Shown here piece after piece: positions 12,353-64,000 of a stretch of 64,000 nucleotides of DNA. The notes below the pieces were generated by a model, which saw only the letters and a list, made by a program, of their open reading frames with translations, ran no database searches and was not told the origin of the DNA. The translations under genes and the position numbers were made by a program. Positions within the stretch are counted from its first letter, which is position 1; the number at the start of each line of letters is the position of its first letter. The DNA is taken from the IMG/VR virus record IMGVR_UViG_3300027816_000051, positions 224,261-288,260 of that record; one strand, given 5' to 3'.

Positions 12353-13936
12353 TTAGGTTGATACCATCTGAATTTTATATGTCCTTGCAATCTGTTCGTA
12401 ATTGTTCTTATTGATATTTTTAAAGACCGACCTCTTATATACAACTTTGTTGGTTTGACTATCTCGGATTGGTCCTTGGAAATTCCAAACAATTAAATCT
12501 TTTTTAGTGGTTGGGTCTTCTATGGTCATACCAACTTCTCCGTCTATATAACTAAGACCTTTAACACGGAATTGCATTACCATATCATCCTCAACATTTG
12601 CTTCGGCTTTAAAGTTTGATAGTACATTGGATAATACCTTTTTGATAGATTCACTAATAATACTTTCAGCCATGGTTGAAGTTTCATCATTTCCACTCAA
12701 TTGTTGGGCTAACATCATAGGACTTTTACAAACTTCACCATCACCACCCAATTGTTCGAAATATGTTGGTGCGTTTTGAACGAGATAACTTGTTCCTTTA
12801 TCACCCATTGCAAATACTCTTGCACCTTTGGCTAATTTTTGAACCCTTGGGTCTTCAATGAATTTAGCGGGAACCCCAACACATCCATAACTTTGATTCG
12901 CATTTGCGATTAATTTAATTGAGTTCAAATATTCTTTTGGTACCTTACCCGCAGATAAGTCGGCTTTTAATACGTTTCTTAAATCTTCACTGGCTGTTAG
13001 TCTCCCTTCAATATTGGGAATACCGTGAATCGCGGCAGCCATTTGTTTACCCCCTTGGTCTTTCAAATTGAATACATTTTTACCTTTACCAGTATATCCC
13101 GTATTACTACCTAAACTTGATATGTTATAAATGCCCTTTGCTAAAAAACGTTCTTTGTAGTGGTCAACAACAAAATAAGCAGCATCGGCTATACATATTT
13201 TTGATGACTCATCCCATCTTCTTCTTGAGTCTTTTACACAGGATTCTTTTGTTGTAAAATTACTTGCGGTACAAAGACGAGGAGACGCTTCTAATTTTTG
13301 ACCTTTTGCGTCATCACCGGGTACCGGACTATTTTTACACCAATCCGCGTGAGTATAACTTTTACTATCTGATATTGATTTTTGTTCATTAGCACCATCA
13401 ACAACTTGGGTGTGAAGTACGTATTTACTACCTGTATCAAAAAGATATATCAAATTGTACTTTGGGTCGTAAACGAAAAACGGTTTGTCGTTTAATTTTC
13501 TTTTTTCAATGTATGTTAATTCAGCATCGATTCTTGGGGTATAGTTATATTTTGTACCTACAGTTTCGGATTTCTTTTCCAATTCTGATTTTTGTTTAGC
13601 AACTGGATTTACAACAATTGGTTTGGTTTGTAGATTGTCTTGATATCCAGCATAACCTCCTTGTTGACCAAGTCTACCCGTATTTAAACCCGTAAATTTC
13701 TTCACAGGTTCCACCGGTTTTGTTGAACCGAATACTTTTGTTTTGATTGCTTCTTTTCCCGTACCGGTGGCTAATCTATATGTTTTTTGGTTTTTTAATT
13801 TATAATAGTAGTTGTCACCATCTTTCATGTAATCGTACTTACCATCATAATTGGTGACATAGGTTTTCTGTTCGTTGATAACTGATTCGACAATATTAAC
13901 TAAATCCGACTCAGTGAGTCTTATTACTTTTCCCAT
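12353..13936 (-). CDS. Putative virion protein with YkuD/L,D-transpeptidase-like domain
   Basis: Leader VIRLTESDL; AIHG...SYGCVGV His/Cys motif. Confidence 0.55.
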   Translation of the reverse strand: MGKVIRLTESDLVNIVESVINEQKTYVTNYDGKYDYMKDGDNYYYKLKNQKTYRLATGTGKEAIKTKVFGSTKPVEPVKKFTGLNTGRLGQQGGYAGYQDNLQTKPIVVNPVAKQKSELEKKSETVGTKYNYTPRIDAELTYIEKRKLNDKPFFVYDPKYNLIYLFDTGSKYVLHTQVVDGANEQKSISDSKSYTHADWCKNSPVPGDDAKGQKLEASPRLCTASNFTTKESCVKDSRRRWDESSKICIADAAYFVVDHYKERFLAKGIYNISSLGSNTGYTGKGKNVFNLKDQGGKQMAAAIHGIPNIEGRLTASEDLRNVLKADLSAGKVPKEYLNSIKLIANANQSYGCVGVPAKFIEDPRVQKLAKGARVFAMGDKGTSYLVQNAPTYFEQLGGDGEVCKSPMMLAQQLSGNDETSTMAESIISESIKKVLSNVLSNFKAEANVEDDMVMQFRVKGLSYIDGEVGMTIEDPTTKKDLIVWNFQGPIRDSQTNKVVYKRSVFKNINKNNYEQIARTYKIQMVST

Positions 13937-14042
13937 GTTTTTTTTCTATATAAATATCATAATCAGTCAGAAATTATGAACCTCGTACGCCGGAACCGGG
14001 AATTTTCTTAAAACGTAATATTTATTGGAAATAAAGATTAAT

Positions 14043-14321
14043 ATGAAAAAAAGTATAAAATTAACCGAAGCCGAATTGATAAAGGTGATAAAAAAGGTTA
14101 TTAAAGAATCGAATCTTTCTGAATCCATGTTACCAGGAACTTACGCCATGATGGCAGCAGAAGAAGCCGCATCTAAAGTTTCACAAATGTTAATGAACGA
14201 ATATTCAAGATTTGCCGGACCTGAACAAAAAGGGTCTATTAAGAATATGTTTTTGAAAATGTTTTGTGAACGTCTTGAAAGTATCATCTTGAATAAAGAT
14301 GAAGAAATGGGTCAAGATTAA
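14043..14321 (+). CDS. Hypothetical protein with leader motif
   Basis: MKKSIKLTEAELIKVIKKVIKE; start moved to 14043. Confidence 0.75.
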   Translation: MKKSIKLTEAELIKVIKKVIKESNLSESMLPGTYAMMAAEEAASKVSQMLMNEYSRFAGPEQKGSIKNMFLKMFCERLESIILNKDEEMGQD

Positions 14322-14333
14322 AAAGAAATAATC

Positions 14334-14456
14334 ATGGCAAAGGCAAGAAAAGAACACCCCAAACCCAAAAGTAGAAAATCAGTAAAAAAGACATCTCGTA
14401 GAATCGAAAAGAACAATGAGATGTTGAGAAAGATTTGGGAAGAAATGCGTAAATAA
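14334..14456 (+). CDS. 40-aa basic peptide
   Basis: Not in track; MAKARKEHPKPKSRKSVKKTSRRIEKNNEMLRKIWEEMRK* fills the gap. Confidence 0.6.
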   Translation: MAKARKEHPKPKSRKSVKKTSRRIEKNNEMLRKIWEEMRK

Positions 14457-14471: not shown

Positions 14472-14948
14472 ATGGGACAAAGAATTATCATATCAGAAGA
14501 AGATAAAAACCGTATAAAAGGTTTATACGAACAAACCAGTAGTAAACCATTTAATTTCTTCACATATAAGGACACCGTACACAATATGATTGAATCCATG
14601 ACATCTTTAATGGAAAACATTGAGAGGTCAAAACTGTGTCAATCATTGGACAATCAACTCCAACCGACTTTTGGTTTGGTGGACGATTTGGTTGCAAGAA
14701 TGGCGGCAGATAATGGTATGAGTGAAGGTGAGTCTATTAAGTATGTTTACGATACTTGGAAACAACAAAAAACAGGTGGTATGCCACTTTTAATGAAACT
14801 AATTGGTGGTAACGTAAGTGTCTCAAAAGAAATGGTGGACAAATTATATGCCCACATTAGAACCAAACAAAACGGAGCGTTATTAACCTCCATCATATCG
14901 GACATATTTGGAAGTGCCGGTATTAAACAAATACCAATGTGTTCTTAA
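14472..14948 (+). CDS. Hypothetical protein with leader motif
   Basis: MGQRIIISEEDKNRIKGLYEQ. Confidence 0.75.
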   Translation: MGQRIIISEEDKNRIKGLYEQTSSKPFNFFTYKDTVHNMIESMTSLMENIERSKLCQSLDNQLQPTFGLVDDLVARMAADNGMSEGESIKYVYDTWKQQKTGGMPLLMKLIGGNVSVSKEMVDKLYAHIRTKQNGALLTSIISDIFGSAGIKQIPMCS

Positions 14949-14961
14949 AATATTTATATAC

Positions 14962-15522
14962 ATGGGACAAAGAATTATCATATCCGAAGGGGACAGAAAA
15001 CACATAAGAGGTTTGTACGAACAACCAACTTCAACACCTGAAGAAAACACACCATTTTTAGAGTGGGCGGAAAACGCTGAGATTACACCATTTATTGCAC
15101 CAAACCCATATAGTGGTGGTGATTTGAAATTAGGTGTACAAATTAAAAGTTCAACCGGTGAGGATTTATCTAAAATAAGTCAAACCGCAAACCAAAAGAC
15201 AATCATAAACCTAATTGAAAGAATGGATATCATTACCGAAAACGGACAGGTTGTTCATACTTTCACAACCGAAGAACAAGATGGAAGTGGTAGTGGTTTA
15301 TTTAATTTCTCAACGTTTAAACCCACATATGAAATAATCGATAACTCATTTGTTGTTTACACCACCATAAGTGAAAATTCTGAGGTGATTCAAAAACTTA
15401 AACAGTTTACAAATAAAACAAATAAATTCATTGTTACTGTTACCCCTCGTCTATCAAACGATTTATTAAAGACTGGTTCCAAATTATTCAAAACCAAGTC
15501 AAACATATTAATGGTAAACTAA
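14962..15522 (+). CDS. Hypothetical protein with leader motif
   Basis: MGQRIIISEGDRKHIRGLYEQ; start moved to 14962. Confidence 0.75.
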   Translation: MGQRIIISEGDRKHIRGLYEQPTSTPEENTPFLEWAENAEITPFIAPNPYSGGDLKLGVQIKSSTGEDLSKISQTANQKTIINLIERMDIITENGQVVHTFTTEEQDGSGSGLFNFSTFKPTYEIIDNSFVVYTTISENSEVIQKLKQFTNKTNKFIVTVTPRLSNDLLKTGSKLFKTKSNILMVN

Positions 15523-15548
15523 TATTTATAAAAAAACATTAAAAAATT

Positions 15549-15875
15549 ATGGCAAACAAAATTGAATTAATTGATTTATTGACAAGACTATATGATTACA
15601 TGGAAAATCGTGCGGATGCAGACGGTAGTTCAGAAGGGTATGTTGCAAACGAGGAAATGGGTTTAATGGGTGAAATTGATGATATGTTACATGCGTTGGG
15701 TCAAAAAGGTTTTGGTAGTGATGTCAGAGCGTCCCTTGATTCAAAATACAAATTCGGTGGTTTCAGTTTAAATGAAAACTCAAAAAACAGTAGTAAGAAA
15801 AAGGTTATTAAATTAAACGAATCAGAACTGATTAAGGTGATTAAAAAAGTTATTAAAGAAAACTCAAAAATATGA
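15549..15875 (+). CDS. Hypothetical protein with the leader-like motif at its C-terminus
   Basis: ...KKVIKLNESELIKVIKKVIKEN. Confidence 0.7.
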   Translation: MANKIELIDLLTRLYDYMENRADADGSSEGYVANEEMGLMGEIDDMLHALGQKGFGSDVRASLDSKYKFGGFSLNENSKNSSKKKVIKLNESELIKVIKKVIKENSKI

Positions 15876-16534
15876 AACCAAAAACATTAAACGAAGAGAT
15901 TAACCGTATTAAAAACATCATGGGTTTCATTAATGAATCCATGGATGAACCTACTGGTGAAACTCAAGAATTTAACGGTAAAACCTATCCAAGTCACCAC
16001 GGTAGTCCCTTTGATAGAGGTAGTGCTGATAGTTGGTATAGCCGTGGAACCAACCCACATAAAAACCATCCTGAATATTCCGAAGATTTAACCCCCGAGG
16101 AAATCGATGCGTATTATGCTGGATTCTATTGGAATGAGAGACATGGTGACCATAAAGATTATGGTGATGATGACGATAGAATGAGAGATGATGATTTGGA
16201 TGAATCTAATCATGAATTAAATGAAGATGAGGTAAACTATAATATTAATCGAGCTATCCAATGTTTCTTAAATAAGAAAGGTATTAAAGATGATGCCGGT
16301 CAACCACTAAAGATTGATGGTTCTATTGGTAGATTACCTAATTCAAAATCAGCTCAAGCCATTGCAAAATACCAAGAAAAACTTGGTGTTTATCCTGTGG
16401 ATGGTGTTTGGGGTCCTGATACCATGGAAAAAATGCCACCGAAAGATTTGGCGATGTATAAAGATTGTAAATCTGAATATGGTGACATATTCGATAAGGG
16501 TCTCCACATGTTGGGACTCGACGAAGAAAAATAA
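15872..16534 (+). CDS. Protein with HGSPFDRGSADS motif and C-terminal peptidoglycan-binding-like domain
   Basis: IQCFL...IDG..G...AIAKYQ...VDGVWGPDT. Confidence 0.6.
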   Translation: MKPKTLNEEINRIKNIMGFINESMDEPTGETQEFNGKTYPSHHGSPFDRGSADSWYSRGTNPHKNHPEYSEDLTPEEIDAYYAGFYWNERHGDHKDYGDDDDRMRDDDLDESNHELNEDEVNYNINRAIQCFLNKKGIKDDAGQPLKIDGSIGRLPNSKSAQAIAKYQEKLGVYPVDGVWGPDTMEKMPPKDLAMYKDCKSEYGDIFDKGLHMLGLDEEK

Positions 16535-16588: not shown

Positions 16589-17740
16589 ATGAAAATAATT
16601 ATTTCAGAATCACAATTCATAAAACTTAATCAATCAATATCACAAGAAAGTGAATTGAATGAGAACCTATTGAGGTATTTTATGGGTGGTTATAAATCCG
16701 CAAAAGATTTCGCGAAACTATTAAGAACAAATAAAACGATTTCATCAGAAATTCAAAACGTATTCAAGGACCCCGTCATGTATGGGAAATTTAATTTAGT
16801 TGGTGTTAAAACAGTAGACGATTTCGCAAAATTAATTGAGTCTAATAGATATACACCAAAATTGAAAGGTCAGTTTGAACTTTTTATTTTAAAATCCCCG
16901 AAAGTTTATCCAAATCTAGTGGATATTTCCGCAAATTCTTTAGTGAAGAACAAAACGTTTTTAGAAAAATTTAGACCAGAGATGATGCAAGGTGAATCGG
17001 AATTTAGAATACAATTAAAAAAATCACGATACAACGATTATGCTATAAATAAAATTGTTGAGAAAACTAAACATCTAATCAAAAAATCAACAAATCAATT
17101 TACATCAGCATTAGCACCAATTCAAGCCGAAATCGGGACATTAAAACCCGATTATGTAAAACTTTTTGGTATTGAGAAGTATGATAACTTGGTATCAGCA
17201 CTATTGACTAATAAAATAAATCAGACTCAATTCATCAATACTTTAAGAAGAACAACCGGTAATACCAAAAAAGTTGGTAGTAATATGGTTAAAGTGTTTA
17301 GGGCGGGACCTAAGAAAGATAATTTTTTCTATGTTAGTCCTAGTAAAAAATATGTTACAAAAAACTATGCGTCAAATAATCCAAACGCTGTTCAACCTAT
17401 GTATGTTAATTTGGGTAGAACTTTAGATTTAACTCGTTTAGACCCAAGAGCGGTGAAGATGGACTCTTTTGTAAAATATTTAAAAGATTCGGGTGTAAAA
17501 TTCACAAAAGAAGAAGAAATTAAATTATTAGGTAAATTCCTCAAACCACAAAGTAAAACATCATTTGGAAAAAGTTACCATGACGTACAACTGTGGCACA
17601 TAATTAACACATCACCCGAAATCGCGAGTGCAGCATCAAGAAGTGGTTTTAATTCAATTAAACAATTTGAAACATCATCATTCGCACCAGATGCGTGGAA
17701 TAAAGGTGACTTTTCATATTTTATTTTGAAACAACCTTAA
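16589..17740 (+). CDS. Putative virion protein with C-terminal ADP-ribosyltransferase-like (ART-PolyVal-like) domain
   Basis: Leader MKIIISESQF; VFRAG...FFYVSPSKKYVTKNYA...QPMYVNLGRTLDL...GFNSI. Confidence 0.5.
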   Translation: MKIIISESQFIKLNQSISQESELNENLLRYFMGGYKSAKDFAKLLRTNKTISSEIQNVFKDPVMYGKFNLVGVKTVDDFAKLIESNRYTPKLKGQFELFILKSPKVYPNLVDISANSLVKNKTFLEKFRPEMMQGESEFRIQLKKSRYNDYAINKIVEKTKHLIKKSTNQFTSALAPIQAEIGTLKPDYVKLFGIEKYDNLVSALLTNKINQTQFINTLRRTTGNTKKVGSNMVKVFRAGPKKDNFFYVSPSKKYVTKNYASNNPNAVQPMYVNLGRTLDLTRLDPRAVKMDSFVKYLKDSGVKFTKEEEIKLLGKFLKPQSKTSFGKSYHDVQLWHIINTSPEIASAASRSGFNSIKQFETSSFAPDAWNKGDFSYFILKQP

Positions 17741-17973
17741 TCTTATTTTATTTGTTTTTATTGTATTGGTCAAAAAAGACCATTCCCCATCCGATAAAGA
17801 CAACCCCTAAAATAATATACGGTAAAATCATAACATTTGTTTTTACATAAGATATCAATATTATTTTAATAAACAAAACAATTCTCAATCTACGTAATTA
17901 AGAAACAATAAAAAGACCGTCTTTGAAAGATTTTTTTTGTTTTACCTAATATTTATTAGAAAAGAAAATTATC

Positions 17974-18504
17974 ATGTATAAAAATTTTAGAGTTTCAGAA
18001 GAGGAGAAAAAACAAATTCTTGAAATGCACCAATCAAATGGATATAACGCCGCAAGTAATTTAATTAACGAACAAGGTGGACAAGACCCCGCTTGGATTA
18101 AACAATCCGACTCAAATCTTAATTTTACTTCAAAAGCAAAAATGGGAATTGAGGATGGAACTCAGGCGACTTATGTGGCTGGTGGGTCGGGAGACGACAG
18201 TTTTGTAATTATTATCCCAAAAGGAAGTAAATTTAAAGTATCTCCAAGTGGTTCATTCCTTTTGTCAATAGGATATCTTGTGAGTAAAACCGCACTATTT
18301 CAAAATGGACTTCAACCCGCAACACTTTTCACTGATAATTTAGCAGTGTCAAAAGCACTTCATAGTGGTAAATTAAATGCAAGGGCGGTTAATATTGCAG
18401 GAACTGTTGATGGAAATATAATTTATGAGGGGGGTTCAACAGCGTTTAGATTACCTAACACTGGTGAAGCTTTATCTCAGAGAATTCAAAAATCTTTTGC
18501 ATAA
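17974..18504 (+). CDS. Hypothetical protein with leader motif
   Basis: FRVSEEEKKQILEMH...LINEQ. Confidence 0.75.
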   Translation: MYKNFRVSEEEKKQILEMHQSNGYNAASNLINEQGGQDPAWIKQSDSNLNFTSKAKMGIEDGTQATYVAGGSGDDSFVIIIPKGSKFKVSPSGSFLLSIGYLVSKTALFQNGLQPATLFTDNLAVSKALHSGKLNARAVNIAGTVDGNIIYEGGSTAFRLPNTGEALSQRIQKSFA

Positions 18505-19095: not shown

Positions 19096-19231
19096 AACTT
19101 TTGTTTTAATATTTGAACAAAGTTATATATATTTTTAATATATCCAAATTTTTTTTGAAATATTTTTAAAAAAAAATAATCATGGGTGTCTAATATATTT
19201 CTTGATATTTATATTATAAAGAAGAAAATTC

Positions 19232-20524
19232 ATGAGAAAAGTAATACGATTAACAGAATCGGACTTAGTGGAGGTTGTTAAAAATATTTTATTAGAACAA
19301 AATTATTCAGAGATACAAGGAACCACTGACCCTACACCAATTGCAAAACTTTCGGTTTTAACTGATGCTGGTCTACCGGCTGATAATAATAATTTTAGGG
19401 GGAGATGGGTTTTAGAACAACCAAACATAGGTAAAACTTTTAGTGAAACAAAAAATTTAAGTCTATTTAGAAATTTAACACCAAAATCACCCGCTGGTGG
19501 TGAGAATTATATTGAGATGATGGTACAAAAATTTATACCTAATGAACTAAATCCTGATAAAACAATTAAAAAGAAAGGTTATCCCGATACGAGTACCCCA
19601 CCTGTTGTAGAATCTTTAACTAATAGTGGTTCAAAAACATTTAATGTTAAATACAAAGACCCCGATGGTAAACATACTTGGAGTCTCATTAGGATAGTAG
19701 CATCAGGTAATGGTTTGTTAGCCTTATCTAGAGCGTTATTAGAAGCTCAAGGAACACCAAATAAAATTACAATTGGTATGTCACAAACTAAAAGGGCTAG
19801 CGGTAGTTATGTATATAATGCGGCAAAAATTGGTAATATCACACCAACGTTGAATCTAATATCGAATATGGTAACCGCATCCATTATTACTAAGAGTGGG
19901 TTACTTTCTCCAACATTAAAACAATACGTCAGTGGTGATATGGTTAGTATTGGTACATATTTTAACAGGTCTAACGAAGACATTGCAAAATTAATCGCGA
20001 ATTCGTTATACTTTTTTGATACATTTTTTATTCCCGAAAACGAAATTCAGGTTTTCAGAAAAAAAACAGATTCGTCAGGAAAGTTACTTTTACCAAACTA
20101 TAATTCTCAACCTTTTTTAGATTTGATAAACACAATGCCAGTGTTTAATGACATCCAAGGGTTGGTGGATGGACAAGGTGGATACCAAAAATGGAAAAAT
20201 GTTGAACCAGAGGTTATAAAATTATATGACAAATATAATGAATTAATTAAAAATGCTGTTGTTGAACAATACAAGAAAAGATTATTAGCATTTTTTACTG
20301 ATGTTTATAAAGACGCAAATCAAGCAAATCAACTTGTAAGTTCGACACAATTTAGGTCTGCTAGTATAAAAATTGAGGGTGCATTTAACAACGCGGTCGA
20401 AGGTGTGAAATACACAGGTACGGTAAAAATTGATAATGCAACATCAAAAACAACGGCTAACACCTATGAAGTCGGTAAATCAAAACCTATTACAAATACC
20501 CCAAAACAACCTAACCAAAAATAA
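19232..20524 (+). CDS. Putative virion protein with leader motif
   Basis: MRKVIRLTESDLVEVVKNILLEQ. Confidence 0.75.
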   Translation: MRKVIRLTESDLVEVVKNILLEQNYSEIQGTTDPTPIAKLSVLTDAGLPADNNNFRGRWVLEQPNIGKTFSETKNLSLFRNLTPKSPAGGENYIEMMVQKFIPNELNPDKTIKKKGYPDTSTPPVVESLTNSGSKTFNVKYKDPDGKHTWSLIRIVASGNGLLALSRALLEAQGTPNKITIGMSQTKRASGSYVYNAAKIGNITPTLNLISNMVTASIITKSGLLSPTLKQYVSGDMVSIGTYFNRSNEDIAKLIANSLYFFDTFFIPENEIQVFRKKTDSSGKLLLPNYNSQPFLDLINTMPVFNDIQGLVDGQGGYQKWKNVEPEVIKLYDKYNELIKNAVVEQYKKRLLAFFTDVYKDANQANQLVSSTQFRSASIKIEGAFNNAVEGVKYTGTVKIDNATSKTTANTYEVGKSKPITNTPKQPNQK

Positions 20525-21457: not shown

Positions 21458-21552
21458 GTATTAAAGATACGAATTATTTCTATCAAATCAAAATATAAAA
21501 AATATTTTAAAATTTTTTTGGATATTCCAAAAATATGTTTTATGTTTGTGGT

Positions 21553-22224
21553 ATGAAAAGATTGATTCTGATATTATTATTGGTGAAGTCACAAATTGTT
21601 GTCTCTCAAACAAATCGTATCTCACAAGACTCTATTAATATCTATTTTCAAAATATTGTCAACGAGTATAGGGTTAACAATAACCTAAGTAGTTTATCTA
21701 TTGATACCACATTAAGTCCTTTTACAAAAAATTGGTCGGAGTACATGTTTAAACAAAATTATTGTGGACATGGTGTTGGCGACGAATCATTTGAAAATCG
21801 AGCAATTAATTTTGTATCTATAAGAGAACTTTATTGTGTTGAAAACGTGGCGGGTCCGTGGGATTTTACCAAAGACTTACCATATGATGTTGAAGACCCA
21901 AGTTACACATATTATACTAAAATTGGATTGGATGGTCTCGATTACAAATACAAATTAACCAGCACCGAAATACACACTTTATTGGATGTTGAAAATAAAA
22001 TAGGTGAAGGTGTAAACACCAACAAAAATATTGCAGTTTTCGTTTTTTATCTATGGAAAAACTCACCATCTCACAACGAAGCGTTATTAGATTATCAAAC
22101 AACTAAATTCTATGTTTCCATAACATATGTTGGTACAAAAATAACAGCGTCGTATTTAGCCACAAGTTCCCCGAAACCAATAAGTAAAAAAAGACAGGGA
22201 TGGTTAAGTAAATTATGTCGTTAG
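21553..22224 (+). CDS. Secreted CAP/SCP domain protein
   Basis: VNEYRVNNNL...GH...ENVA...WKNSPSHNEALL; signal peptide; TATGTTTG at 21541-21548. Confidence 0.8.
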   Translation: MKRLILILLLVKSQIVVSQTNRISQDSINIYFQNIVNEYRVNNNLSSLSIDTTLSPFTKNWSEYMFKQNYCGHGVGDESFENRAINFVSIRELYCVENVAGPWDFTKDLPYDVEDPSYTYYTKIGLDGLDYKYKLTSTEIHTLLDVENKIGEGVNTNKNIAVFVFYLWKNSPSHNEALLDYQTTKFYVSITYVGTKITASYLATSSPKPISKKRQGWLSKLCR

Positions 22225-22265: not shown

Positions 22266-22727
22266 ATGACCCAAATTATAGTAACAGAAACGCAGTTAAA
22301 GAACCTCACAAGAAGATTAAACGAAGATTCTATGGATAGTAAGTATAGAATGGAATGTAAAGCCGACGTTGATTATTATAAAGTAATGTACAACGGTATG
22401 GAAATTGAATATGTATATCCATTAAATATTAACGTAAATTTTGACATCGATTTAGAGGGAAGAAGTTATGGTATTAAAAGTGTATCCGTATATAATATCG
22501 TTGGTCCATCTGAAGTAGAAATGGAGATAGAATACTACCCTGAAAATAGTGATGATTCAGTAGATGAAACCGTTGTTGTGCCACTAAATTGGGATAATGT
22601 TGTAATAGATAAGGATGAGAATTTGGGTTATATTGGTATTGGTGATATTATACAAATTTCATTGAAAAATGATGAGAGTGGTAAAATCGTTTGTGATACC
22701 ATTACAGTAAGTAGTTTCTCTATATAA
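22266..22727 (+). CDS. Hypothetical protein with leader motif
   Basis: MTQIIVTETQLKNL...LNED. Confidence 0.75.
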   Translation: MTQIIVTETQLKNLTRRLNEDSMDSKYRMECKADVDYYKVMYNGMEIEYVYPLNINVNFDIDLEGRSYGIKSVSVYNIVGPSEVEMEIEYYPENSDDSVDETVVVPLNWDNVVIDKDENLGYIGIGDIIQISLKNDESGKIVCDTITVSSFSI

Positions 22728-29476: not shown

Positions 29477-29830
29477 TTATTTTTCTTTGATTAATAATTC
29501 ACCCAATACTTCAATTTTACCAACCAATTCTTGAAATGGTATCTGTTTAATATTCATACCATCCTTTGTTGATTCATATAATTTTTCTAAAAGTTTTTTG
29601 TATTCTTTTTCCATTGTTTCTTTGGTGAGTTTACCTTCAGATGCTTTTTTGTAATAAGGTAATTTAACAACAAAGTGATGATACGTCAATAACGAGATAC
29701 CACCTTTTTCTTTTGCGGTATCACTAATTTTTTTTGCACCACCCATTCGGGTTTCAGCAAATTTTTCAAATTCGGTTAATTCCGATTCGATTAGTCTTTT
29801 TAATTGGGATTCAGATAAAAGTATTTTCAT
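29477..29830 (-). CDS. Hypothetical protein with leader motif
   Basis: MKILLSESQLKRLIE. Confidence 0.75.
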   Translation of the reverse strand: MKILLSESQLKRLIESELTEFEKFAETRMGGAKKISDTAKEKGGISLLTYHHFVVKLPYYKKASEGKLTKETMEKEYKKLLEKLYESTKDGMNIKQIPFQELVGKIEVLGELLIKEK

Positions 29831-29832: not shown

Positions 29833-30465
29833 TTACATAAAGTTTCCATCAAAACCAAATTTTCTAACCAATTTTCTTCTTCGTTTACAACCTGGATTTA
29901 CACCACTTCTTGAACGACCTCCAAAAATTAATTTACCTAATTTGACAACAATTATTAATGCTATTACACCCGCAACAATTACCACGGCAACACCCGGTAC
30001 AGATACTCCTGCAATAATTACGGGAGCGAGTTGTTCTTGAGTTGGTTGTGGTGATTTAGATTTTTTCTGAATTGATAACACTTGTTTTAAAGTGTTAACC
30101 AAACCGTTTTTATCCATTTTATCTAAATTTTGTTTGATGACATCAACAATTTTAGAATACTGTGAAGGAGTTTCATACTCCTCACAATTTGGTTGGATTT
30201 CTGATTTTTCTTCGGGTGTGAGAATAACACCTGCAGACATTAAAAGAGAATCGAATTCTTGTTCCTGCGGTGAAACGTCTTCTTCTTTAATGTCTTTAAT
30301 ATTTTTCACTTCTTTATCGTACTCCTTAAATCTATCGGGATTTGACATTAAAGCACTTTTTGGAAATATTCTTTTTTTACGAGTGTTCGCGAGAGTTCTC
30401 GACCTCTCATCAATTTCACTGTCTATAATCTTCTTTAATTGAGATTCTGTGATAATGTATTTCAT
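29833..30465 (-). CDS. Leader-motif protein with C-terminal TM helix
   Basis: MKYIITESQLKKII; VIIAGVSVPGVAVVIVAGVIALIIVV then basic tail. Confidence 0.75.
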   Translation of the reverse strand: MKYIITESQLKKIIDSEIDERSRTLANTRKKRIFPKSALMSNPDRFKEYDKEVKNIKDIKEEDVSPQEQEFDSLLMSAGVILTPEEKSEIQPNCEEYETPSQYSKIVDVIKQNLDKMDKNGLVNTLKQVLSIQKKSKSPQPTQEQLAPVIIAGVSVPGVAVVIVAGVIALIIVVKLGKLIFGGRSRSGVNPGCKRRRKLVRKFGFDGNFM

Positions 30466-30545: not shown

Positions 30546-30983
30546 TTATTTTATTTTTGAACTTAAACTATCGATGATGGGATTTCCCATGTATTTGTTA
30601 AATGTTTTCTTAAGATTTTTTTGTCCTTCGTTTAACATAAAATCATCTTCCATTGTCATACCTGTTTCCATATCAATTTGTGCATCAACCGGTACATCTG
30701 AATAGTCATCTTCTTCTAAATCTACATCAATTTCTTGAGGTGGATTTGGTAATTGGTTGGGTCTATTCATGCCCATGTTGTAGTCAACAAATTTACCATC
30801 CTCTACGTCTAAATTTAATTTAATTTCAGCTGGTGGATTAGGTAGTTGATTTTCATCATCACTCTTACCCATATTGTAATCAATCGGTTCAATATCTTCT
30901 AAACTTTCTTTTAGTTTTTGTTTTGTTGTATATTGAATTAGTCTTTTTAATTGTGACTCTCTAAGTATAACATTTTTTCCCAT
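30546..30983 (-). CDS. Acidic leader-motif protein with internal repeat
   Basis: VILRESQLKRLI; DYNMG...NQLPNPP.EI twice. Confidence 0.75.
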   Translation of the reverse strand: MGKNVILRESQLKRLIQYTTKQKLKESLEDIEPIDYNMGKSDDENQLPNPPAEIKLNLDVEDGKFVDYNMGMNRPNQLPNPPQEIDVDLEEDDYSDVPVDAQIDMETGMTMEDDFMLNEGQKNLKKTFNKYMGNPIIDSLSSKIK

Positions 30984-31022: not shown

Positions 31023-31280
31023 TTAGTACCTACCATTTAGGTAAACATATAAAACTTCAGGTATTTTTGTACATGTTTGTTTATTACCTTGTTGGTCATA
31101 ACAATCTAAATAAGGTAATTTTTCAATGATGTCCCTAATTTCTTTAGGTGCAACAAAATAACCTTTTTGGTTTTTTACCAAAAGTCTTTTTACCAAACTC
31201 TCTCTGTGATATAATTTATCTCGTTCATAGTATTCCTTAAGAACGTTTTTATATTGGGATTCGGATATTAAAATTTTCAT
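31023..31280 (-). CDS. Hypothetical protein with leader motif
   Basis: MKILISESQYKNVLKE. Confidence 0.75.
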   Translation of the reverse strand: MKILISESQYKNVLKEYYERDKLYHRESLVKRLLVKNQKGYFVAPKEIRDIIEKLPYLDCYDQQGNKQTCTKIPEVLYVYLNGRY

Positions 31281-31646: not shown

Positions 31647-32222
31647 TTATTCAACTTCTGGTTCATTAACCATTTGGTCTTGAGCTAAAGCGTTTTTCAT
31701 CGATTTAGTTAATGAATTATATACTTGTTCACCAAATCGGTCCATGATTTCATTTTCATCTCTAAGGTCAATAAAATTACCTCTAACCATAAAACCTAAA
31801 ACATTTTCTAAATTAATACTTCTCCAAGCTCCTTTTGCCGCTTCCATCTTAGCTTGTTCGTCATCAACCCCCATACCTCTTAATTCTTTTAATTTTTTAA
31901 TATAAGAGTTTACGTCAACAACTTTTTTAATGTTGTTATTCATTTCAACATTCATTTGTTTTTCAGTTTTTTCTCTGTCACTTCCAACATAAGAACTTAA
32001 ACTTTTTTTGATGGACATGTGACGAACTGAACCATCTTTTTTAACAAATGCCACACTTACAAGTATGTTATTGTCGATGGTATCTCTCAGTTGTTGTAAC
32101 TCATCACCCCCACTAAATCTTTCATAATCTAATTTTTCTTCAACGTCCATAGTTGATTCGTTAATCATTCTATCTAACAGACGTTTTAATTGTGACTCAG
32201 TAACTATAATTTTTCTACTCAT
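31647..32222 (-). CDS. WYL-like/SH3 beta-barrel (DUF2693-type) protein with leader motif
   Basis: VAFVKKDGSVRHM...AWRSINLEN; start moved to 32222 (MSRKIIVTESQL). Confidence 0.6.
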   Translation of the reverse strand: MSRKIIVTESQLKRLLDRMINESTMDVEEKLDYERFSGGDELQQLRDTIDNNILVSVAFVKKDGSVRHMSIKKSLSSYVGSDREKTEKQMNVEMNNNIKKVVDVNSYIKKLKELRGMGVDDEQAKMEAAKGAWRSINLENVLGFMVRGNFIDLRDENEIMDRFGEQVYNSLTKSMKNALAQDQMVNEPEVE

Positions 32223-54222: not shown

Positions 54223-54273
54223 ATAGACCATTTATTTTCAGACTAAAAATTATTAAATTTTGAAAAAATACTT

Positions 54274-55107
54274 ATGAATAACCCAAATATTGTTGTCACA
54301 TTTACCACAATACCTTCAAGATTAATCAGTAATCACCAATTCGACATGAGATATTGTTTGGATTCGTTGTTAAATCAATCCTATGAGGGAGAATATGAGG
54401 TACATCTAAACATTCCATATGTTTGTAAAAAAATAAACACTGAGTACGTTATACCAGAATGGTTGACAGAACTTGAAACTTCAAACAAAAGATTAAAAAT
54501 TTTTAGAACCGAAGACTACGGACCACTAACAAAATTATTACCAACTTTAGAGAGAATTGAAGAGGATGAAACTATAATTATTGTTGTTGATGATGATTTG
54601 GTTTACCATTCGGATATGGTAAAAGAACATGTAAACAATCAAAGTAAATGGTTAGATTCTCCTGTTGGGTATGATGGTATGCGTTCTAGAAATGAAGACG
54701 GGACTTTCTCAAATTTCTTTGGTGACACGAGGGACCATTATTACTCAGGTACTCACAGAGATTCTAGAGTTGATATCCTACAACATTACAAAACAATCTC
54801 GTACAAAAGAAGATATTTTGGTGACGACTTTAAGGAGTTTGTTGAAAAATATTACACATGGAACGATGACCTTTTTGTTTCGGCGTATTTTGCGAGTAAA
54901 AAAATTGATAGATACACCACATATTATGAAAACGATGTGGTTTACGGACCTTATGATGAATGGTTAGCAAATGTTGGTAAAACATTCCCATTAATTCAAA
55001 GTACACATCACGAATCCATTGAAGGGTGTAACCTTTTTAGGAGAGATAACGATGATGATAATTCTTCACAATTATATAAATTCATCGATTCAGGATATCA
55101 AAAATAA
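54274..55107 (+). CDS. GT2-like glycosyltransferase
   Basis: VVTFTTIPSR, DYGPLTKLLP, VVDDD, NDD. Confidence 0.7.
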   Translation: MNNPNIVVTFTTIPSRLISNHQFDMRYCLDSLLNQSYEGEYEVHLNIPYVCKKINTEYVIPEWLTELETSNKRLKIFRTEDYGPLTKLLPTLERIEEDETIIIVVDDDLVYHSDMVKEHVNNQSKWLDSPVGYDGMRSRNEDGTFSNFFGDTRDHYYSGTHRDSRVDILQHYKTISYKRRYFGDDFKEFVEKYYTWNDDLFVSAYFASKKIDRYTTYYENDVVYGPYDEWLANVGKTFPLIQSTHHESIEGCNLFRRDNDDDNSSQLYKFIDSGYQK

Positions 55108-55115
55108 TAAAAAAC

Positions 55116-59139: not shown

Positions 59140-59223
59140 GATATTCAAATTTTGAGCTAAAATAGGTATATTTTTATACAATACAAGAAAATTTTAAACA
59201 TTTTTTTTGGTATTTATAGGGAT

Positions 59224-59478
59224 ATGAACATTATAATCTCAGAAAAACAATATAAACATTTATTTGGTGGTAACCAATTAGATGAACAAGGTGATGACCC
59301 GGCCGCAGCTCAACCATCGAGCGGTGTTGGTAGTTCAGGTAGTAAAGAAGGTTATCCTGAGGTTGGAAAATGGGAAAGTGGTGTAACCCGAGGTCCAGCC
59401 AATCAAGTCGGAGTCACAAAATGGTCCGACGTTGTTGGTTCACTTTTAAAAAGGAGTCATGCAAATCCACTCAAATAA
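59224..59478 (+). CDS. Small protein with leader motif
   Basis: MNIIISEKQY...LDEQ; KWESGVTRGPANQ. Confidence 0.75.
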   Translation: MNIIISEKQYKHLFGGNQLDEQGDDPAAAQPSSGVGSSGSKEGYPEVGKWESGVTRGPANQVGVTKWSDVVGSLLKRSHANPLK

Positions 59479-59511
59479 AAAGGTATTTATTAGATATTTA
59501 TAGATTAAAAT

Positions 59512-60807
59512 ATGATGTACAACAATAAATTAGTGATATCTGAGTCTGAAAGAAGAAGAATCTCAAACATTTATGAAAATTCTTTTTCTTTGGATTATGT
59601 GATTACAGATTGGGTATCACCTGATGAAAAGTATGTTATCTTTCTTGATGAACTTTTCGATATTGAAAACAAAACCAAATTAGGTAATGTTTGGGAAAAT
59701 TTTGACAACTTTAAATTTTTCTTAAGACATTCATTTGAAGTTTCAACAACAGTACCTCAACAAATCAAAGAAGAAGCACTTCAAACCTTAGATTCATTTA
59801 TTTTAACTGAGTCAACACAAAATTTTACACACTTAAAGCCGATATTCAAACAATTACTCCAAGAAGATTGGGGTATTCTTGGTGATTTAGCTAATTGGGC
59901 TAAAGATACCGCTGTAAGTGCTTACACGGGATTTACAGATTTTGTTTCTACAAGTTATGAAGGGGCAAAAAAATTAATTGGGGCAATATCAAAGGGTGAA
60001 TGGTCTCGTGTATTAGATTTAGTTAAAAAAGGCGCTTTATATGTAGCAAGAAAAGTTAGAGGGATGTTATACCATCCTGTTGGTTTAGCTTTAGATGCAA
60101 TATTAGTTGCCACAGGTATAGGTAAGGGTATCGCTTGGATACCATGGGCAATTGCGGTTGGTTTAGACATTTACGAATTTATTTCAGGTGACTATGAAGA
60201 CCCTGAATTACATTGGGGGTGGAGATTATTATTCTTTGCCTGTGATATTTTAGGGTTAGTAGTGACGGGAATGGCGGCCAAAGTACCAAGACAATTATTG
60301 TTAGGTTTAGTAAGTAGATTTGGTAAGACTCAACAAGGTTTAAAATTGGCGGTACAAAGCTCACCAAAAATACAGTCATTTTTAAAAAGTGTCAGTGAAG
60401 GTTTATCAAGTGTTAAAGGTTTTATGGGAAAAGCACTATCGTATTTCCAAGTTAAATCACCTTTTATGTATAAATTCTTTTCAGGTATTATGGGTGGTAT
60501 TGGTAAATTTATAACAAAACTCACAAATTTAATTTCTTTCTTACTTGGGGCAACTTTAAAAGGTGCCGTGAAATTAGGTAAAGGAGCATTGAATGTTCTT
60601 AATACACCCGGTAAACTCGCAATGAAATTAGGTGGTGGAAAGGGAACCGCCGCCGCGGCAAACGTATTAGTCCCCGCTGCGGCTATTGGTACAGCTGGAG
60701 AATATATGAAAAGAAAAGAAATGGAGAAATCCGTAGAACAAGAAAAGAAGGTTGAAGCTGGTCTTACTTCGGGCCCTCCTTCTGAATATAACCCTAAAGA
60801 TTTATAA
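59512..60807 (+). CDS. Leader-motif protein with hydrophobic/amphipathic helices
   Basis: LVISESERRRI; LALDAILVATGIGKGIAWIPW; LLFFACDILGLVV. Confidence 0.7.
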   Translation: MMYNNKLVISESERRRISNIYENSFSLDYVITDWVSPDEKYVIFLDELFDIENKTKLGNVWENFDNFKFFLRHSFEVSTTVPQQIKEEALQTLDSFILTESTQNFTHLKPIFKQLLQEDWGILGDLANWAKDTAVSAYTGFTDFVSTSYEGAKKLIGAISKGEWSRVLDLVKKGALYVARKVRGMLYHPVGLALDAILVATGIGKGIAWIPWAIAVGLDIYEFISGDYEDPELHWGWRLLFFACDILGLVVTGMAAKVPRQLLLGLVSRFGKTQQGLKLAVQSSPKIQSFLKSVSEGLSSVKGFMGKALSYFQVKSPFMYKFFSGIMGGIGKFITKLTNLISFLLGATLKGAVKLGKGALNVLNTPGKLAMKLGGGKGTAAAANVLVPAAAIGTAGEYMKRKEMEKSVEQEKKVEAGLTSGPPSEYNPKDL

Positions 60808-62964: not shown

Positions 62965-62975
62965 AATTAATCATA

Positions 62976-63578
62976 ATGGAATTAAAAAATTATATTAAAG
63001 AAACTTTATTAGAGGAAAGAGAAAGAAAACTTTATTCATCTTTTGACGAATTAAACAACATTAGAGATAAAGAATATTTTCTTGAGAGATATTTTATTAT
63101 CACCTCAAATTTACTTAACGAGGGATACTCGTTTGAGGAAGTTGAATCCGCAATGAACGAAATTGAAAATCCATTATCTGGTCTTGACCTAACTGGTGAT
63201 GATTTATTAAGTGCGGGTGGTTCACAATTGAAAGAGTACGCAATCAATCTATTATTAACATTTATTTTTGGTGGTAAGAATCAAGGAATGATTACAACCA
63301 TCTCAGTGGTTTTTGCCGATTACGATGTTAGAGATATACTCAAACCTTTTAAAGATGAACCAAATTGTATGTCTCATATGCCAAAAATGATTGATGGAGT
63401 ATTAGAAGCTTTATCAAGATATGTGGCAGGTTCTGCTGTTGGTGTAGATAGGAATAATTACGGATTAAATTTAGGAGGTTTAACTTCAGGATTTGCTGGA
63501 AATATATTTGGTGAGGTAATAAAAGATTCTAATATAGGTGAAACCATATCGGACAAAATATGTAAATTTATTCATTAA
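62976..63578 (+). CDS. Hypothetical protein
   Basis: Leader YIKETLLEE. Confidence 0.7.
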   Translation: MELKNYIKETLLEERERKLYSSFDELNNIRDKEYFLERYFIITSNLLNEGYSFEEVESAMNEIENPLSGLDLTGDDLLSAGGSQLKEYAINLLLTFIFGGKNQGMITTISVVFADYDVRDILKPFKDEPNCMSHMPKMIDGVLEALSRYVAGSAVGVDRNNYGLNLGGLTSGFAGNIFGEVIKDSNIGETISDKICKFIH

Positions 63579-63579
63579 C

Positions 63580-64000
63580 ATGAAACTTACAAAAAAAGAA
63601 ATATTAGAAAATAAAAAAGTATTAAAAGAGGACACTCTTGAAAATATTTTAATGATTGCGGGATTTGTACCTGTAATTGGTGAAATTGCTGACATTATAT
63701 TGATTATTAGATATATCTATAAAAAAGAATATTTATACGCGGCATTGATGTTAGTGGCTTTAATACCAACCGTGGGTGATTTCATTGTAAAACCATTCAT
63801 AAGAGTATTAAAAGGTGCAGGTATTGCAGGTAAAACAGCACTAAGAAGTAGTGACGATTTAGCTAAATATTTAATGCAAAATCCAAGTGCAAAAGAACAA
63901 TTCTTAAAAATGTCCAAACACTTTGACGATGCTGGTGTTAAACAAACAATTAACTCAGTTGGTGGAATCAATAAAGGTTGGGCACAAAAAATGACTGATG
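63580..64000 (+). CDS. Partial protein with pre-toxin TG (PT-TG)-like hydrophobic hairpin
   Basis: Not in track; MKLTKKEILE...LMIAGFVPVIGEIADI...AALMLVALIPTVGD; open to window end. Confidence 0.6.
   Translation, partial: MKLTKKEILENKKVLKEDTLENILMIAGFVPVIGEIADIILIIRYIYKKEYLYAALMLVALIPTVGDFIVKPFIRVLKGAGIAGKTALRSSDDLAKYLMQNPSAKEQFLKMSKHFDDAGVKQTINSVGGINKGWAQKMTD

What the first reader, a model, noticed from the sequence alone, without database searches (positions are those of the whole stretch)
12353..63640. About 25 unrelated proteins share an N-terminal leader: candidate portable capsid-targeting tag
Seen: variants of [KR]-[IV]-[IRL]-[IL]-[ST]-E-S-[QD]-[LFY]..[LI][IV]...[IL]-x-E start the ORFs beginning at 13936, 14043, 14472, 14962, 16589, 17974, 19232, 22266, 29830, 30465, 30983, 31280, 32222, 59224 and 59512; shorter IL.E leaders occur at 15872, 25598, 27412, 28116, 28800, 34754, 40313, 62976 and 63580; the motif is C-terminal in 15549. 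The first ~65 nt of 14472 and 14962 are closely similar but the bodies differ. Known: T4 internal proteins carry a short capsid-targeting sequence removed by the prohead protease after Glu. Inference: a modular tag loading diverse cargo (ART-like, YkuD-like, WYL-like, PG-binding, membrane proteins) into the head.
Basis: partly seen in the sequence, partly recalled or inferred. Interest (0 to 1): 0.72.

Follow-up and report, generated by a model that had tools for sequence, protein, structure and literature searches.

The report
Portable N-terminal tag on phage proteins
An uncultured 288-kb lake phage with a T4-type head puts the same ~22-residue N-terminal peptide, with Glu-ending cleavage-like sites, on about 17 unrelated late proteins; this is most likely an address label that loads them into the capsid and is then cut off, but no virion data exist.

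Summary
The shared leader is real, but it marks about 17 genes, not 25. Fourteen N-termini, one C-terminus (15549-15875) and one internal site carry it, and two variants (15872, 17974) are supported by leader swapping. An HMM built only from other phages' leaders scores 11 window N-termini at 13-35 bits; the best of 1690 internal windows scores 10.4. The eight "short IL.E leaders" (25598, 27412, 28116, 28800, 34754, 40313, 62976, 63580) score as noise.

- **Selection:** it acts on the peptide. Codons vary freely and the first Glu is invariant in 93 of 93 unique leaders.
- **Carriers:** their bodies show no detectable similarity to one another.
- **Genome:** a 288-kb lake phage with a T4-type head module and an S77 (gp21-family) prohead protease.
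- **Cleavage-like sites:** every strict leader has two [ILV]-x-E sites. One body family carries four leader types, all ending in hydrophobic-x-E-[S/D].
- **Expression:** leader genes share a TATTTATA box with the terminase, portal and scaffold genes.
- **Spread:** relatives carry 8-20 leaders each, on lysozyme, SET, CCA-adding-like and other bodies, some in multi-leader proteins. The motif is almost absent from prokaryotic genomes.

Best reading (about 0.5): a T4-like capsid-targeting and cleavage tag, longer and far more widely used than T4's. No virion data exist.

The parts
12353..13936 (-). 527-aa carrier. N-terminal leader of type B (KVIRLTESDL..IV..VINE). A second, internal leader-like copy starts at an in-frame Met (residue 422, window 12673).
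   Evidence: 29.4 bits; 21.4 bits with the independent HMM. Internal copy. TATTTATA box at 13949-13956.
14043..14321 (+). 92-aa carrier, type B leader.
   Evidence: 26.4 bits; 13.3 bits independent. TATTTATT box at 14019-14026.
14472..14948 (+). 158-aa carrier, type C leader (RIIISE.D+..I+GLYE).
   Evidence: 25.6 bits, but 8.4 bits with the independent HMM. First 66 nt are 54/66 identical to 14962.
14962..15522 (+). 186-aa carrier, type C leader.
   Evidence: 29.0 bits; 7.0 bits independent. Box at 14951-14958.
15549..15875 (+). 108-aa protein with the leader motif at its C-terminal end (window 15798-15866).
   Evidence: 21.9 bits, residues 85-108. 46/57 nt identical to the leader of 14043. 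Box at 15523-15530.
15872..16534 (+). 220-aa protein with a variant leader (LNEEI.RIK.IMGFINE). Its body has a borderline PG_binding_1 hit.
   Evidence: Below HMM threshold. The same leader type replaces the standard leader on homologues of the 31647 body. Pfam 22.6 bits against a cut-off of 23.
16589..17740 (+). 383-aa carrier, type A leader. C-terminal domain has conserved FRAG / VSPS / QFE motifs (possibly ADP-ribosyltransferase-like).
   Evidence: 29.3 bits; 21.3 bits independent. Homologues keep the leader while residues 20-150 differ. Fold matches Z about 5, mostly ART folds: inconclusive.
17974..18504 (+). 176-aa protein with a variant leader (MYKNF.VSE.E+..ILE.H..GY).
   Evidence: 6.4 bits. 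The same leader type stands on about 11 homologues of the 31647 body. TATTTATT box at 17950-17957.
19232..20524 (+). 430-aa carrier, type B leader.
   Evidence: 27.2 bits; 19.7 bits independent. Box at 19206-19213.
22266..22727 (+). 153-aa carrier, type A leader.
   Evidence: 28.8 bits; 16.1 bits independent. Box at 22246-22253.
29477..29830 (-). 117-aa carrier, type A leader. Directly downstream of 29833-30465.
   Evidence: 31.4 bits; 31.2 bits independent. Orthologue with leader in a relative.
29833..30465 (-). 210-aa carrier, type A leader, with C-terminal hydrophobic (membrane-like) segments.
   Evidence: 33.0 bits; 35.2 bits independent. TM-like windows at residues 144 and 163. Box at 30470-30477. 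Two small contigs of an RNA library lie inside it (weak).
30546..30983 (-). 145-aa acidic carrier, type A leader.
   Evidence: 29.0 bits; 14.1 bits independent. Box at 31001-31008.
31023..31280 (-). 85-aa carrier, type A leader.
   Evidence: 32.7 bits; 29.1 bits independent.
31647..32222 (-). 191-aa carrier, type A leader, with a widespread body family (phrog_2267).
   Evidence: 35.0 bits; 26.8 bits independent. 120 homologues carry swapped leader types. AF2: leader helix at residues 9-23, linker 19-39 with pLDDT <50, body pLDDT about 90. Box at 32236-32243.
59224..59478 (+). 84-aa carrier, type A leader.
   Evidence: 29.4 bits; 21.9 bits independent. Box at 59211-59218.
59512..60807 (+). 431-aa carrier, type C leader, with glycine-rich hydrophobic segments.
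   Evidence: 25.1 bits; 8.6 bits independent. TM-like windows. Weak tape-measure PHROG hit, E=0.0012. Box at 59495-59502.

Best explanation
The roughly 22-25-residue leader has a short hydrophobic strand (consensus M-K-I-I-I-T-E) followed by an amphipathic helix (S-Q-L-K-x-L-I ... hydrophobic-x-E). It most likely works as a portable capsid-targeting and processing tag of a T4-type head.

Proposed sequence of events:
1. Late in infection the tagged proteins are made together with the head proteins.
2. The tag binds a component of the scaffolding core or the inner shell, so the cargo is built into the prohead.
3. The S77 (gp21-family) prohead protease cuts after the invariant first Glu (I-[TS]-E) and after the second [ILV]-x-E at the leader/body junction. 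It also cuts at internal or C-terminal copies.
4. The freed cargo stays in the head and enters the next host cell with the DNA.

Shown here:
- the motif, its portability and its swapping between bodies;
- selection at the protein level;
- the T4-type head module with the protease;
- the promoter box shared with head genes;
- restriction of the motif to viral sequences.

Inferred only: binding to the core, cleavage, presence in virions, and ejection.
For: 1. **T4-type head.** The genome encodes terminase, a gp20-like portal, an S77 protease (PF03420 E=2.9e-23; T4 gp21 structure 5JBL E=1.9e-12), a scaffold-sized protein and a gp23-like capsid protein, in T4 order.
2. **Invariant Glu and cleavage-like sites.** Glu is invariant in 93/93 unique leaders while its neighbours use all synonymous codons. 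All 14 strict leaders have two [ILV]-x-E sites, ending at residues 7-11 and 16-26, against 34/349 other N-termini. T4 proteases cut after Glu, and T4 Alt is cut at ITE-6 and LTE-619 (PMC5694885).
3. **Leader swapping.** On one body family (120 homologues) four leader types or none are found, and the junction stays hydrophobic-x-E-[S/D].
4. **Shared promoter box.** TATTTAT[AT] lies 11-29 nt upstream of 10/14 leader genes against 45/349 others (Fisher p=1.8e-6). It also precedes the terminase, portal and scaffold genes. In relatives the figures are 59/121 against 114/638 (p=5e-12).
5. **Portability.** In 80 loci of other phages 121 of 123 hits are N-terminal, on 53 unrelated bodies that include Phage_lysozyme+LysM, SET and PolyA_pol/CCA-adding domains.
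6. **Co-occurrence with the protease.** Four near-complete jumbo relatives (portal 62-82% identical) all have S77 and carry 8-20 leaders each.
7. **Viral restriction.** The 596-Gb prokaryote collection gave 18 matches, only 2 of them leader-like.
8. **Structure prediction.** AF2 models the leader as a separate helix joined to a confident body by a low-confidence linker.
9. **Precedent.** T4 internal proteins are diverse proteins that share only a capsid-targeting sequence (PMC3012670).
Against: - There is no virion proteome, no isolate and no cleavage data.
- The protease-plus-leader complex prediction gave no answer.
- The tag is about twice the length of T4's ~10-residue CTS (PMC9958956). 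It is conserved on both sides of the first Glu, so a single cut there would leave half of it on the cargo.
- 45 of 122 database representatives carry two or more copies, some in tandem with almost nothing else. That would also suit a multivalent binding or assembly module.
- Some tagged enzymes in relatives (CCA-adding-like, SET) have no precedent as packaged proteins.
- 'Late' timing rests only on sharing a promoter box with head genes.
Confidence: 0.5

Rival explanations
1. The motif is only a processing cassette. It marks cleavage sites for the S77 protease, or another Glu-specific protease, that cut multi-module precursors or activate proteins. It does not direct anything into the capsid.
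For: Multi-leader proteins with leader-body-leader-body architecture exist (P0032, P0006, P0012). The Glu is invariant and the junction motif is conserved.
Against: Glu-specific phage proteases use a site of about three residues (PMC5694885). Here about 20 residues are conserved, including an amphipathic helix, which points to an additional binding partner. In T4, gp21 becomes active only after the prohead is assembled (PMC9958956), so its substrates would have to be inside anyway.
Confidence: 0.15
2. The motif is a docking or self-association module for a hub other than the head core. Candidates are a tail or baseplate part, a membrane complex, or an intracellular assembly. Multi-copy proteins would act as cross-linkers.
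For: 45 of 122 representatives carry several copies, including tandem ones. Some carriers have membrane-like segments. One carrier has a weak tape-measure hit.
Against: No hub is identified. The cleavage-like sites at both ends of the tag and at the junction would be unexplained. The enzyme cargo (lysozyme, SET, nucleotidyltransferase) is not typical of tail parts.
Confidence: 0.15
3. The conserved unit is really a DNA-level expression and recombination cassette (promoter box, ribosome site, first codons). It spreads by gene shuffling or favours translation, and the peptide itself is incidental.
For: Promoter box and leader travel together. 14472/14962 and 14043/15549 share leader DNA but not bodies, which suggests recombination at leaders.
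Against: Conserved residues are encoded by all synonymous codons (4 Thr, 5 Ser including AGT, 6 Leu). Four of 14 leader genes lack the box. C-terminal and internal copies have no promoter role. Conservation extends 20 residues with helical periodicity.
Confidence: 0.07
4. The carriers are diverged paralogues of one ancestral gene in which only the N-terminus stayed recognisable, so there is no portable tag.
For: The genes are clustered (13.9-32.2 and 59.2-60.8 kb). Some neighbours share leader DNA.
Against: Bodies differ in length (84-527 aa), in charge (pI 4.1-9.9) and in domain content. In relatives the leader sits on established Pfam families that occur widely without it. One body family carries different leaders or none.
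Confidence: 0.03

Closest known systems
T4 capsid-targeting sequence (CTS) of internal proteins IPII/IPIII, and the N- and C-terminal propeptides of Alt
   Same: A short N-terminal peptide is shared by otherwise diverse proteins of a phage with a T4-type prohead and a gp21-family protease. Cleavage-like sites end in Glu; Alt is cut at ITE-6 and LTE-619. C-terminal copies also occur. The T4 tag can carry foreign proteins into the head (PMC3012670, PMC5694885, PMC9958956).
   Different: This tag is about 22-25 residues against about 10 in T4. It has two Glu sites with conserved residues between them, and at least four interchangeable sequence types. It stands on about 17 genes here, 8-20 in relatives, and on multi-leader proteins. 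No experimental evidence of packaging or cleavage exists. Sequence similarity to the T4 CTS was not tested, because no T4 sequence was fetched.
Propeptides of ejection / inner-body proteins of giant phages phiKZ, 201phi2-1 and SPN3US
   Same: In jumbo phages many head-internal proteins are processed after Glu. Diverged paralogues keep identical N-termini that were proposed to act as a CTS (PMC5694885).
   Different: Those phages use S80 proteases and A/S/G-x-E sites. Here the protease scores as S77 and the sites are [ILV]-[ST/x]-E. The shared N-termini there link paralogues; here they link unrelated bodies.
P1 DarB N-terminal packaging signal
   Same: An N-terminal stretch of about 30 residues is sufficient to send a reporter into the capsid (PMC9024508).
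   Different: It is known for one protein in one phage, is not a family-wide shared motif, and is not tied to Glu-specific cleavage.
Encapsulin cargo-loading peptides (own knowledge, not tested)
   Same: A short terminal peptide addresses diverse enzymes to the interior of an HK97-fold shell.
   Different: They are usually C-terminal, are not cleaved, and belong to a cellular nanocompartment rather than a virion.

Membership tests
T4-type CTS / internal head proteins | A short terminal peptide shared by proteins that are otherwise unrelated | tested here: met
   14 N-termini score 25-35 bits against a null maximum of 8.0. The independent HMM supports 11 of the 14. Bodies are unrelated by blastp.
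T4-type CTS / internal head proteins | The phage builds a T4-type prohead: gp20-like portal, scaffold, gp23-like capsid protein and a gp21-family (S77) protease | tested here: met
   PF03420 E=2.9e-23. PHROG portal, protease and major head hits in T4 gene order. T4 gp21 structure 5JBL E=1.9e-12.
T4-type CTS / internal head proteins | The tag ends in the protease's Glu-terminated site (L/I-x-E) | tested here: met
   14/14 leaders have two [ILV]-x-E sites. Glu is invariant in 93/93. The junction hydrophobic-x-E-[S/D] is kept across leader types. Only the sequence motif is shown, not cleavage.
T4-type CTS / internal head proteins | The tag is actually removed by the prohead protease | not testable with these tools
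   The complex prediction gave no answer. Mass spectrometry of virions or an in-vitro cleavage assay is needed.
T4-type CTS / internal head proteins | Tagged proteins are inside virions, and the tag is sufficient for encapsidation | not testable with these tools
   There is no isolate: nothing was found in 50,697 phage records, and the nearest isolates lack the leader.
T4-type CTS / internal head proteins | Sequence relationship to the T4 CTS itself | not tested
   No T4 IP sequence was fetched. Length (about 22-25 against about 10 residues, PMC9958956) and architecture differ. Only the ITE site of Alt matches, by the paper's description (PMC5694885).
phiKZ/SPN3US-type ejection-protein propeptides | An S80-family protease with A/S/G-x-E sites | tested here: not met
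   The protease passes the Pfam S77 cut-off. The residue two before the Glu is I/L/V in all strict leaders.
Sec / lipoprotein / Tat signal peptides | A hydrophobic core of about 10 or more residues after a basic N-region, with no acidic residues in the core | tested here: not met
   Only 3-4 hydrophobic residues come before an invariant Glu. Genuine signal peptides occur on other window proteins, for example 11733, 18553(-), 20555(-) and 36796.

The most novel reading that the evidence does not exclude
An uncultured clade of lake jumbo phages with T4-type heads uses a family of interchangeable address-and-cleavage labels. These labels load dozens of different effectors into the capsid, singly or as multi-module precursors that the prohead protease cuts apart, and the effectors are injected with the DNA. 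The cargo includes a cell-wall hydrolase, a SET methyltransferase, a CCA-adding/poly(A)-polymerase-like enzyme, ART-like proteins and membrane proteins. If so, the injected-protein repertoire of uncultured phages could be read directly from sequence.
Probability: 0.4. Interest if true: 0.8.

Novelty: new variant of a known kind. Interest (0 to 1): 0.68.

Why it matters
If the tag works as proposed, it gives a sequence-only way to list the proteins that a large group of uncultured phages carries into the host. Such proteins are the first to act in an infection and are often counter-defence factors. It would also show that the T4 idea of a portable capsid-targeting peptide has been expanded into a large modular system: at least four leader types, 53 or more unrelated bodies in a small sample, and multi-leader precursors. 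Finally, it would offer a new packaging tag for engineering phage heads as protein carriers. The swapping of leaders on one body, and of bodies behind one leader, is a clear example of modular evolution at a peptide-sized joint.

Tried and rejected
- **Complex prediction:** S77 protease with residues 1-40 of the 31647 protein gave no answer (score 0.02). It is not evidence either way.
- **Family searches:** Pfam and PHROG searches of the carriers were almost all blank.
- **Isolates:** megablast of the region and tblastn of the 31647 body against 50,697 phage records found nothing.
- **Nearest isolates by capsid protein:** Flavobacterium phage immuto, Rhodothermus RM378 and Microcystis Mel-JY01 have no leader. 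One 484-kb uncultured phage has two weak hits.
- **ESM Atlas look-up of the leader peptide:** uninformative.
- **Full-text search for the peptide strings:** found no biology paper.
- **ART test of 16589-17740:** AF2 pLDDT 71.5. The best Foldseek E-value was 0.17. VIA Z was about 5, almost all ART folds plus a cyanophage pre-ejectosome chain. This is suggestive but below the level that separates true relatives.
- **Fold search of the 31647 body:** no clear match.
- **'Short IL.E leaders':** rejected as members.
- **False friends of the pattern:** an internal site of a ~940-aa protein (KADLRDYD-IIISESQFKLW...) and a fibre-like repeat protein, P0017.
- **RNA evidence:** only two small contigs of one metatranscriptome lie in one leader gene, and DNA carry-over cannot be excluded.
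Full report
**Context**

The window is the last 64 kb (224261-288260) of a single 288,260-bp viral contig with 33% G+C. The contig is an IMG/VR record estimated to be 92% complete. Identical or near-identical copies occur in several lake and freshwater metagenomes.

The genome carries a T4-type head module at 23.7-32.7 kb. In order, it holds the large terminase, a gp20-like portal (phrog_213, E=1.5e-65), two small unknown proteins, an S77 prohead protease, a 417-aa scaffold-sized protein and a gp23-like major head protein. The protease matches PF03420 at E=2.9e-23 and phrog_207 at E=1.8e-40. It also aligns with the solved T4 gp21 structure 5JBL at E=1.9e-12.

By capsid protein, the nearest cultured phages are Rhodothermus phage RM378, Flavobacterium phage immuto and Microcystis phage Mel-JY01, at 34-41% identity. 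The phage is therefore an uncultured, distant member of the T4 superfamily.

**The observation**

Three related forms occur in the window:

| Type | Consensus |
|---|---|
| A | M-K-I-I-I-[ST]-E-S-Q-L-K-x-L-I...x-E |
| B | K-V-I-R-L-T-E-S-D-L-x-x-I-V-x-x-V-I-x-E |
| C | R-I-I-I-S-E-x-[DE]-[KR]-x-x-I-x-x-L-Y-E |

- An HMM of 11 seeds, run on all six reading frames of the whole genome, returned 14 hits at E<=0.02. All lie in window 13.9-59.5 kb. Thirteen begin within four residues of a Met that follows a stop, and one lies at the C-terminus of 15549-15875.
- Across the N-termini of 363 called genes, the 14 leaders score 25-35 bits. The next N-terminus scores 7.8 bits, and the best of 1690 internal windows scores 8.0.
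- Those 14 sequences were part of the model, so I built a second HMM from 68 leaders of other phages, none more than 60% identical to a window leader. It scores 11 window leaders at 13.3-35.2 bits, against a null maximum of 10.4. The three type C leaders reach only 7-8.6 bits. Type C also occurs in other phages.
- With the leaders removed, the bodies show no pairwise similarity below E=0.001.
- The eight 'short IL.E leaders' score as noise. The similar starts of 25598 and 27412 were found only on their own orthologues.

**Protein or DNA signal?**

Selection acts on the peptide. Among 93 unique 30-nt core segments, from this window and from other phages, the conserved residues use a wide range of synonymous codons:
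- Thr uses all four codons.
- Ser uses five codons, including AGT.
- Leu uses six codons.
- Ile uses three codons.
- The Glu is present in all 93.

Recombination at leaders has nevertheless left traces. 14472 and 14962 share 54 of their first 66 nt, then 19 of the next 66. The C-terminal copy in 15549 shares 46/57 nt with the leader of 14043.

**Regulation**

A TATTTAT[AT] box lies 11-29 nt upstream of 10 of the 14 leader genes, against 45 of 349 other genes (Fisher p=1.8e-6). The same box precedes the terminase, portal and scaffold genes and several very large genes. Of the leader genes without the box:
- 29477 follows 29833 directly, so it may be co-transcribed.
- 14472 and 16589 have near-matches.

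In the loci of other phages the box precedes 59/121 leader ORFs, against 114/638 other ORFs (p=5e-12).

The small minus-strand genes at window 4-12 kb use a different repeated intergenic cassette, and none of them has the leader. I read the TATTTATA box as the morphogenesis-class (late) promoter. This is an inference from the genes that share it, not a measurement.

**Distribution**

- Closer relatives (portal 86-94% identical) carry 3-11 leader hits on partial contigs.
In the 80 loci returned, most matches sit directly after 'MK' at an ORF start, many on contigs of 100-330 kb.
- Scanning those 695 kb with the leader HMM gave 123 ORFs, 121 with the hit in the first ten residues. Their bodies fall into 53 BLAST-unrelated clusters.
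- Representatives of those clusters include Phage_lysozyme+LysM, a SET-domain protein and a PolyA_pol/CCA-adding-type nucleotidyltransferase. In each, the Pfam domain begins after the leader and a linker.
- Four near-complete jumbo genomes (portal 62-82% identical to this phage) all encode S77 proteases and carry 8, 12, 16 and 20 leader hits.
- A 32-position profile searched against 1.84 billion representative proteins found 122 at E<=0.001. Of these, 110 have an N-terminal copy, 45 have two or more copies and 14 have a copy at the very C-terminus.
- Some of those proteins are leader-body-leader-body chains. One contains a homologue of the 31647 body as its middle module.
- The same DNA pattern found only 18 places in 596 Gb of prokaryotic genomes. 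Two are leader-like, and both lie on small contigs of metagenome bins.
- The three nearest cultured phages have no leader.

**Leader swapping**

The body of 31647-32222 has at least 145 homologues, of which 120 were examined:

| N-terminus | Approximate count |
|---|---|
| Type A or B leader, above HMM threshold | 80 |
| Weaker type A/B versions | 14 |
| 'MYKNF-x-L-T-[DE]-x-E...GY..PLNE' (as at window 17974) | 11 |
| 'LNEEI-x-R-I-K-x-M-M-G-K-x-I-x-E' (as at window 15872) | 5 |
| No leader; protein starts at the body | 4 |
| Truncated or otherwise different N-termini | remainder |

In the alignment, every leader type ends in hydrophobic-x-E-[S/D] just before the body. This makes 17974 and 15872 probable members of the same functional class, although the HMM misses them. 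It also shows that what is conserved is the presence of a leader and the form of its junction, not one particular sequence. Some homologues additionally end in a C-terminal peptide that resembles the 15872-type leader.

**Shape**

With a 42-sequence alignment, AlphaFold2 models 31647-32222 as follows:
- a helix at residues 9-23 (pLDDT about 65);
- a linker at residues 19-39 with pLDDT below 50;
- a confident body (pLDDT about 90 over residues 41-185).

The leader therefore behaves as a separate appendage.

**Mechanism**

The closest precedent is T4. Its internal proteins are 'a highly diverse set' that share only a capsid-targeting sequence (PMC3012670). That tag takes them into the scaffolding core, and gp21 then cuts it off after Glu (PMC5694885, PMC9958956). 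T4 Alt is cut at ITE-6 and also at LTE-619.

Here the first site is usually I-[TS]-E at residue 7-9. All 14 strict leaders have two [ILV]-x-E sites, against 10% of other N-termini.

I therefore favour a capsid-targeting tag that the S77 protease removes. Internal and C-terminal copies would serve as further cleavage or targeting points. The confidence is about 0.5 because no step after translation has been observed.

**Points against, and rivals**

- The tag is longer than T4's and is conserved on both sides of the first Glu.
- Multi-copy and tandem arrangements would equally suit a multivalent docking module.
- Several cargo enzymes have no precedent as packaged proteins.
- A processing-only cassette, a docking module for another hub, a DNA-level cassette and plain paralogy are weighed in the rival list. 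The last two are contradicted by the codon and body-swapping data.

**Cargo claims**

|---|---|---|
| YkuD-like | 28205-28795 | phrog_3000, but no leader |
| PG-binding | 15872-16534 | Just under the Pfam cut-off |
| WYL-like | 31647-32222 | Just under the Pfam cut-off |
| Membrane proteins | 29833-30465, 59512-60807 | Have hydrophobic segments |
| ART-like | 16589-17740 | See below |

For 16589-17740, the homologues conserve FRAG, VSPS and QFE motifs. The weak structural matches are nearly all ADP-ribosyltransferase folds (Z about 5). Nothing reaches significance, so this remains a lead only.

**Novelty**

The concept of a capsid-targeting sequence is known. New here are:
- this tag family and its dual-site architecture;
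- its interchangeable types;
- its scale, at about 17 genes here, 8-20 in relatives and at least 53 body families in a small sample;
- the multi-leader proteins.

I found no description of the peptide in the searchable literature.

Noticed in passing
window 41115-57488: A 16-kb plus-strand block of sugar-modification genes. It holds two GlcNAc-transferase-like paralogues (PF11397), a HAD+nucleotidyltransferase fusion, a TylF-methyltransferase+HtrL+GT2 fusion (790 aa) and three paralogous 267-279-aa proteins (46189, 50645, 51484). In the middle sits a RuBisCO-large-chain-like protein (48707-49936, PF00016 E=1e-31), which is unusual for a phage.
   Followed up: partly
window 4000-12000: Nine copies of a 56-77-nt intergenic cassette (plus-strand core ...GGTTTAAC.ATACAAATATAA...CCAAAT...) lie between small minus-strand genes, together with G+C-rich hairpin-like repeats (5040, 7834, 11002). 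This is probably a second (early?) promoter/terminator class, distinct from the TATTTATA box.
   Followed up: partly
window 9819-10016: A 72-bp tandem repeat, 2.7 copies at 96% match, in a stretch without a convincing gene.
   Followed up: no
window 11733-12350, 21535-22224, 36796-37398: Three proteins have hydrophobic N-terminal signal-like sequences: an M54/metzincin-like peptidase, a CAP/SCP-domain protein and a non-specific DNA/RNA endonuclease (Endonuclease_NS, E=6e-23). They may be secreted or periplasmic phage products.
   Followed up: partly
window 39162-40226: An IMPDH/GMP-reductase-family enzyme (PF00478, E=1.8e-43) is encoded by the phage.
   Followed up: no
genome 33533-34561 (minus strand; L002:14533-15561), and L127, L158, L167: A small C-x-C-G-W-x-W...C-x-x-C zinc-ribbon-like element sits next to leader motifs. 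In other phages it comes after the leader. In this genome's 342-aa protein beside the head module, it comes before a leader-like 'MKIYISEEDL'.
   Followed up: no
G005 (IMG/VR contig of 268,739 bp reached through L143): This near-complete relative has two S77 protease genes and two portal genes (62% and 40% identical to this phage's portal). That means either two head modules or a chimeric assembly.
   Followed up: no
P0017, and loci L098, L102, L106 and others: Two unrelated sequence families match the core pattern. One is a 957-aa fibre-like protein with eight repeats of ITITESQV.GL..DLASKSNTGHTH. The other is a ~940-aa protein with a conserved internal IIISESQFKLW...CHKN site, also present in Firmicutes genomes.
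   Followed up: partly
window 23994-25598, 25595-27412, 33159-34754: Three large neighbouring proteins (531-605 aa) have no family match. Two of them (25595 and 33159) share a W-C-[TV]-T-W region (E=0.001), and two (25598 and 27412) share a LIE..ILEA start. Their function is unknown.
   Followed up: partly
genome 186528-186761, 182771-183964, 146760-148085: Three genes outside the window have weak leader-like N-termini: MKKVVKLSIKDLENIVKRTINE at 8.5-10.6 bits, RRIISESY and NIISESLFDEVKRTILKE. Two of them have the TATTTATA box. They may be further diverged members.
   Followed up: partly
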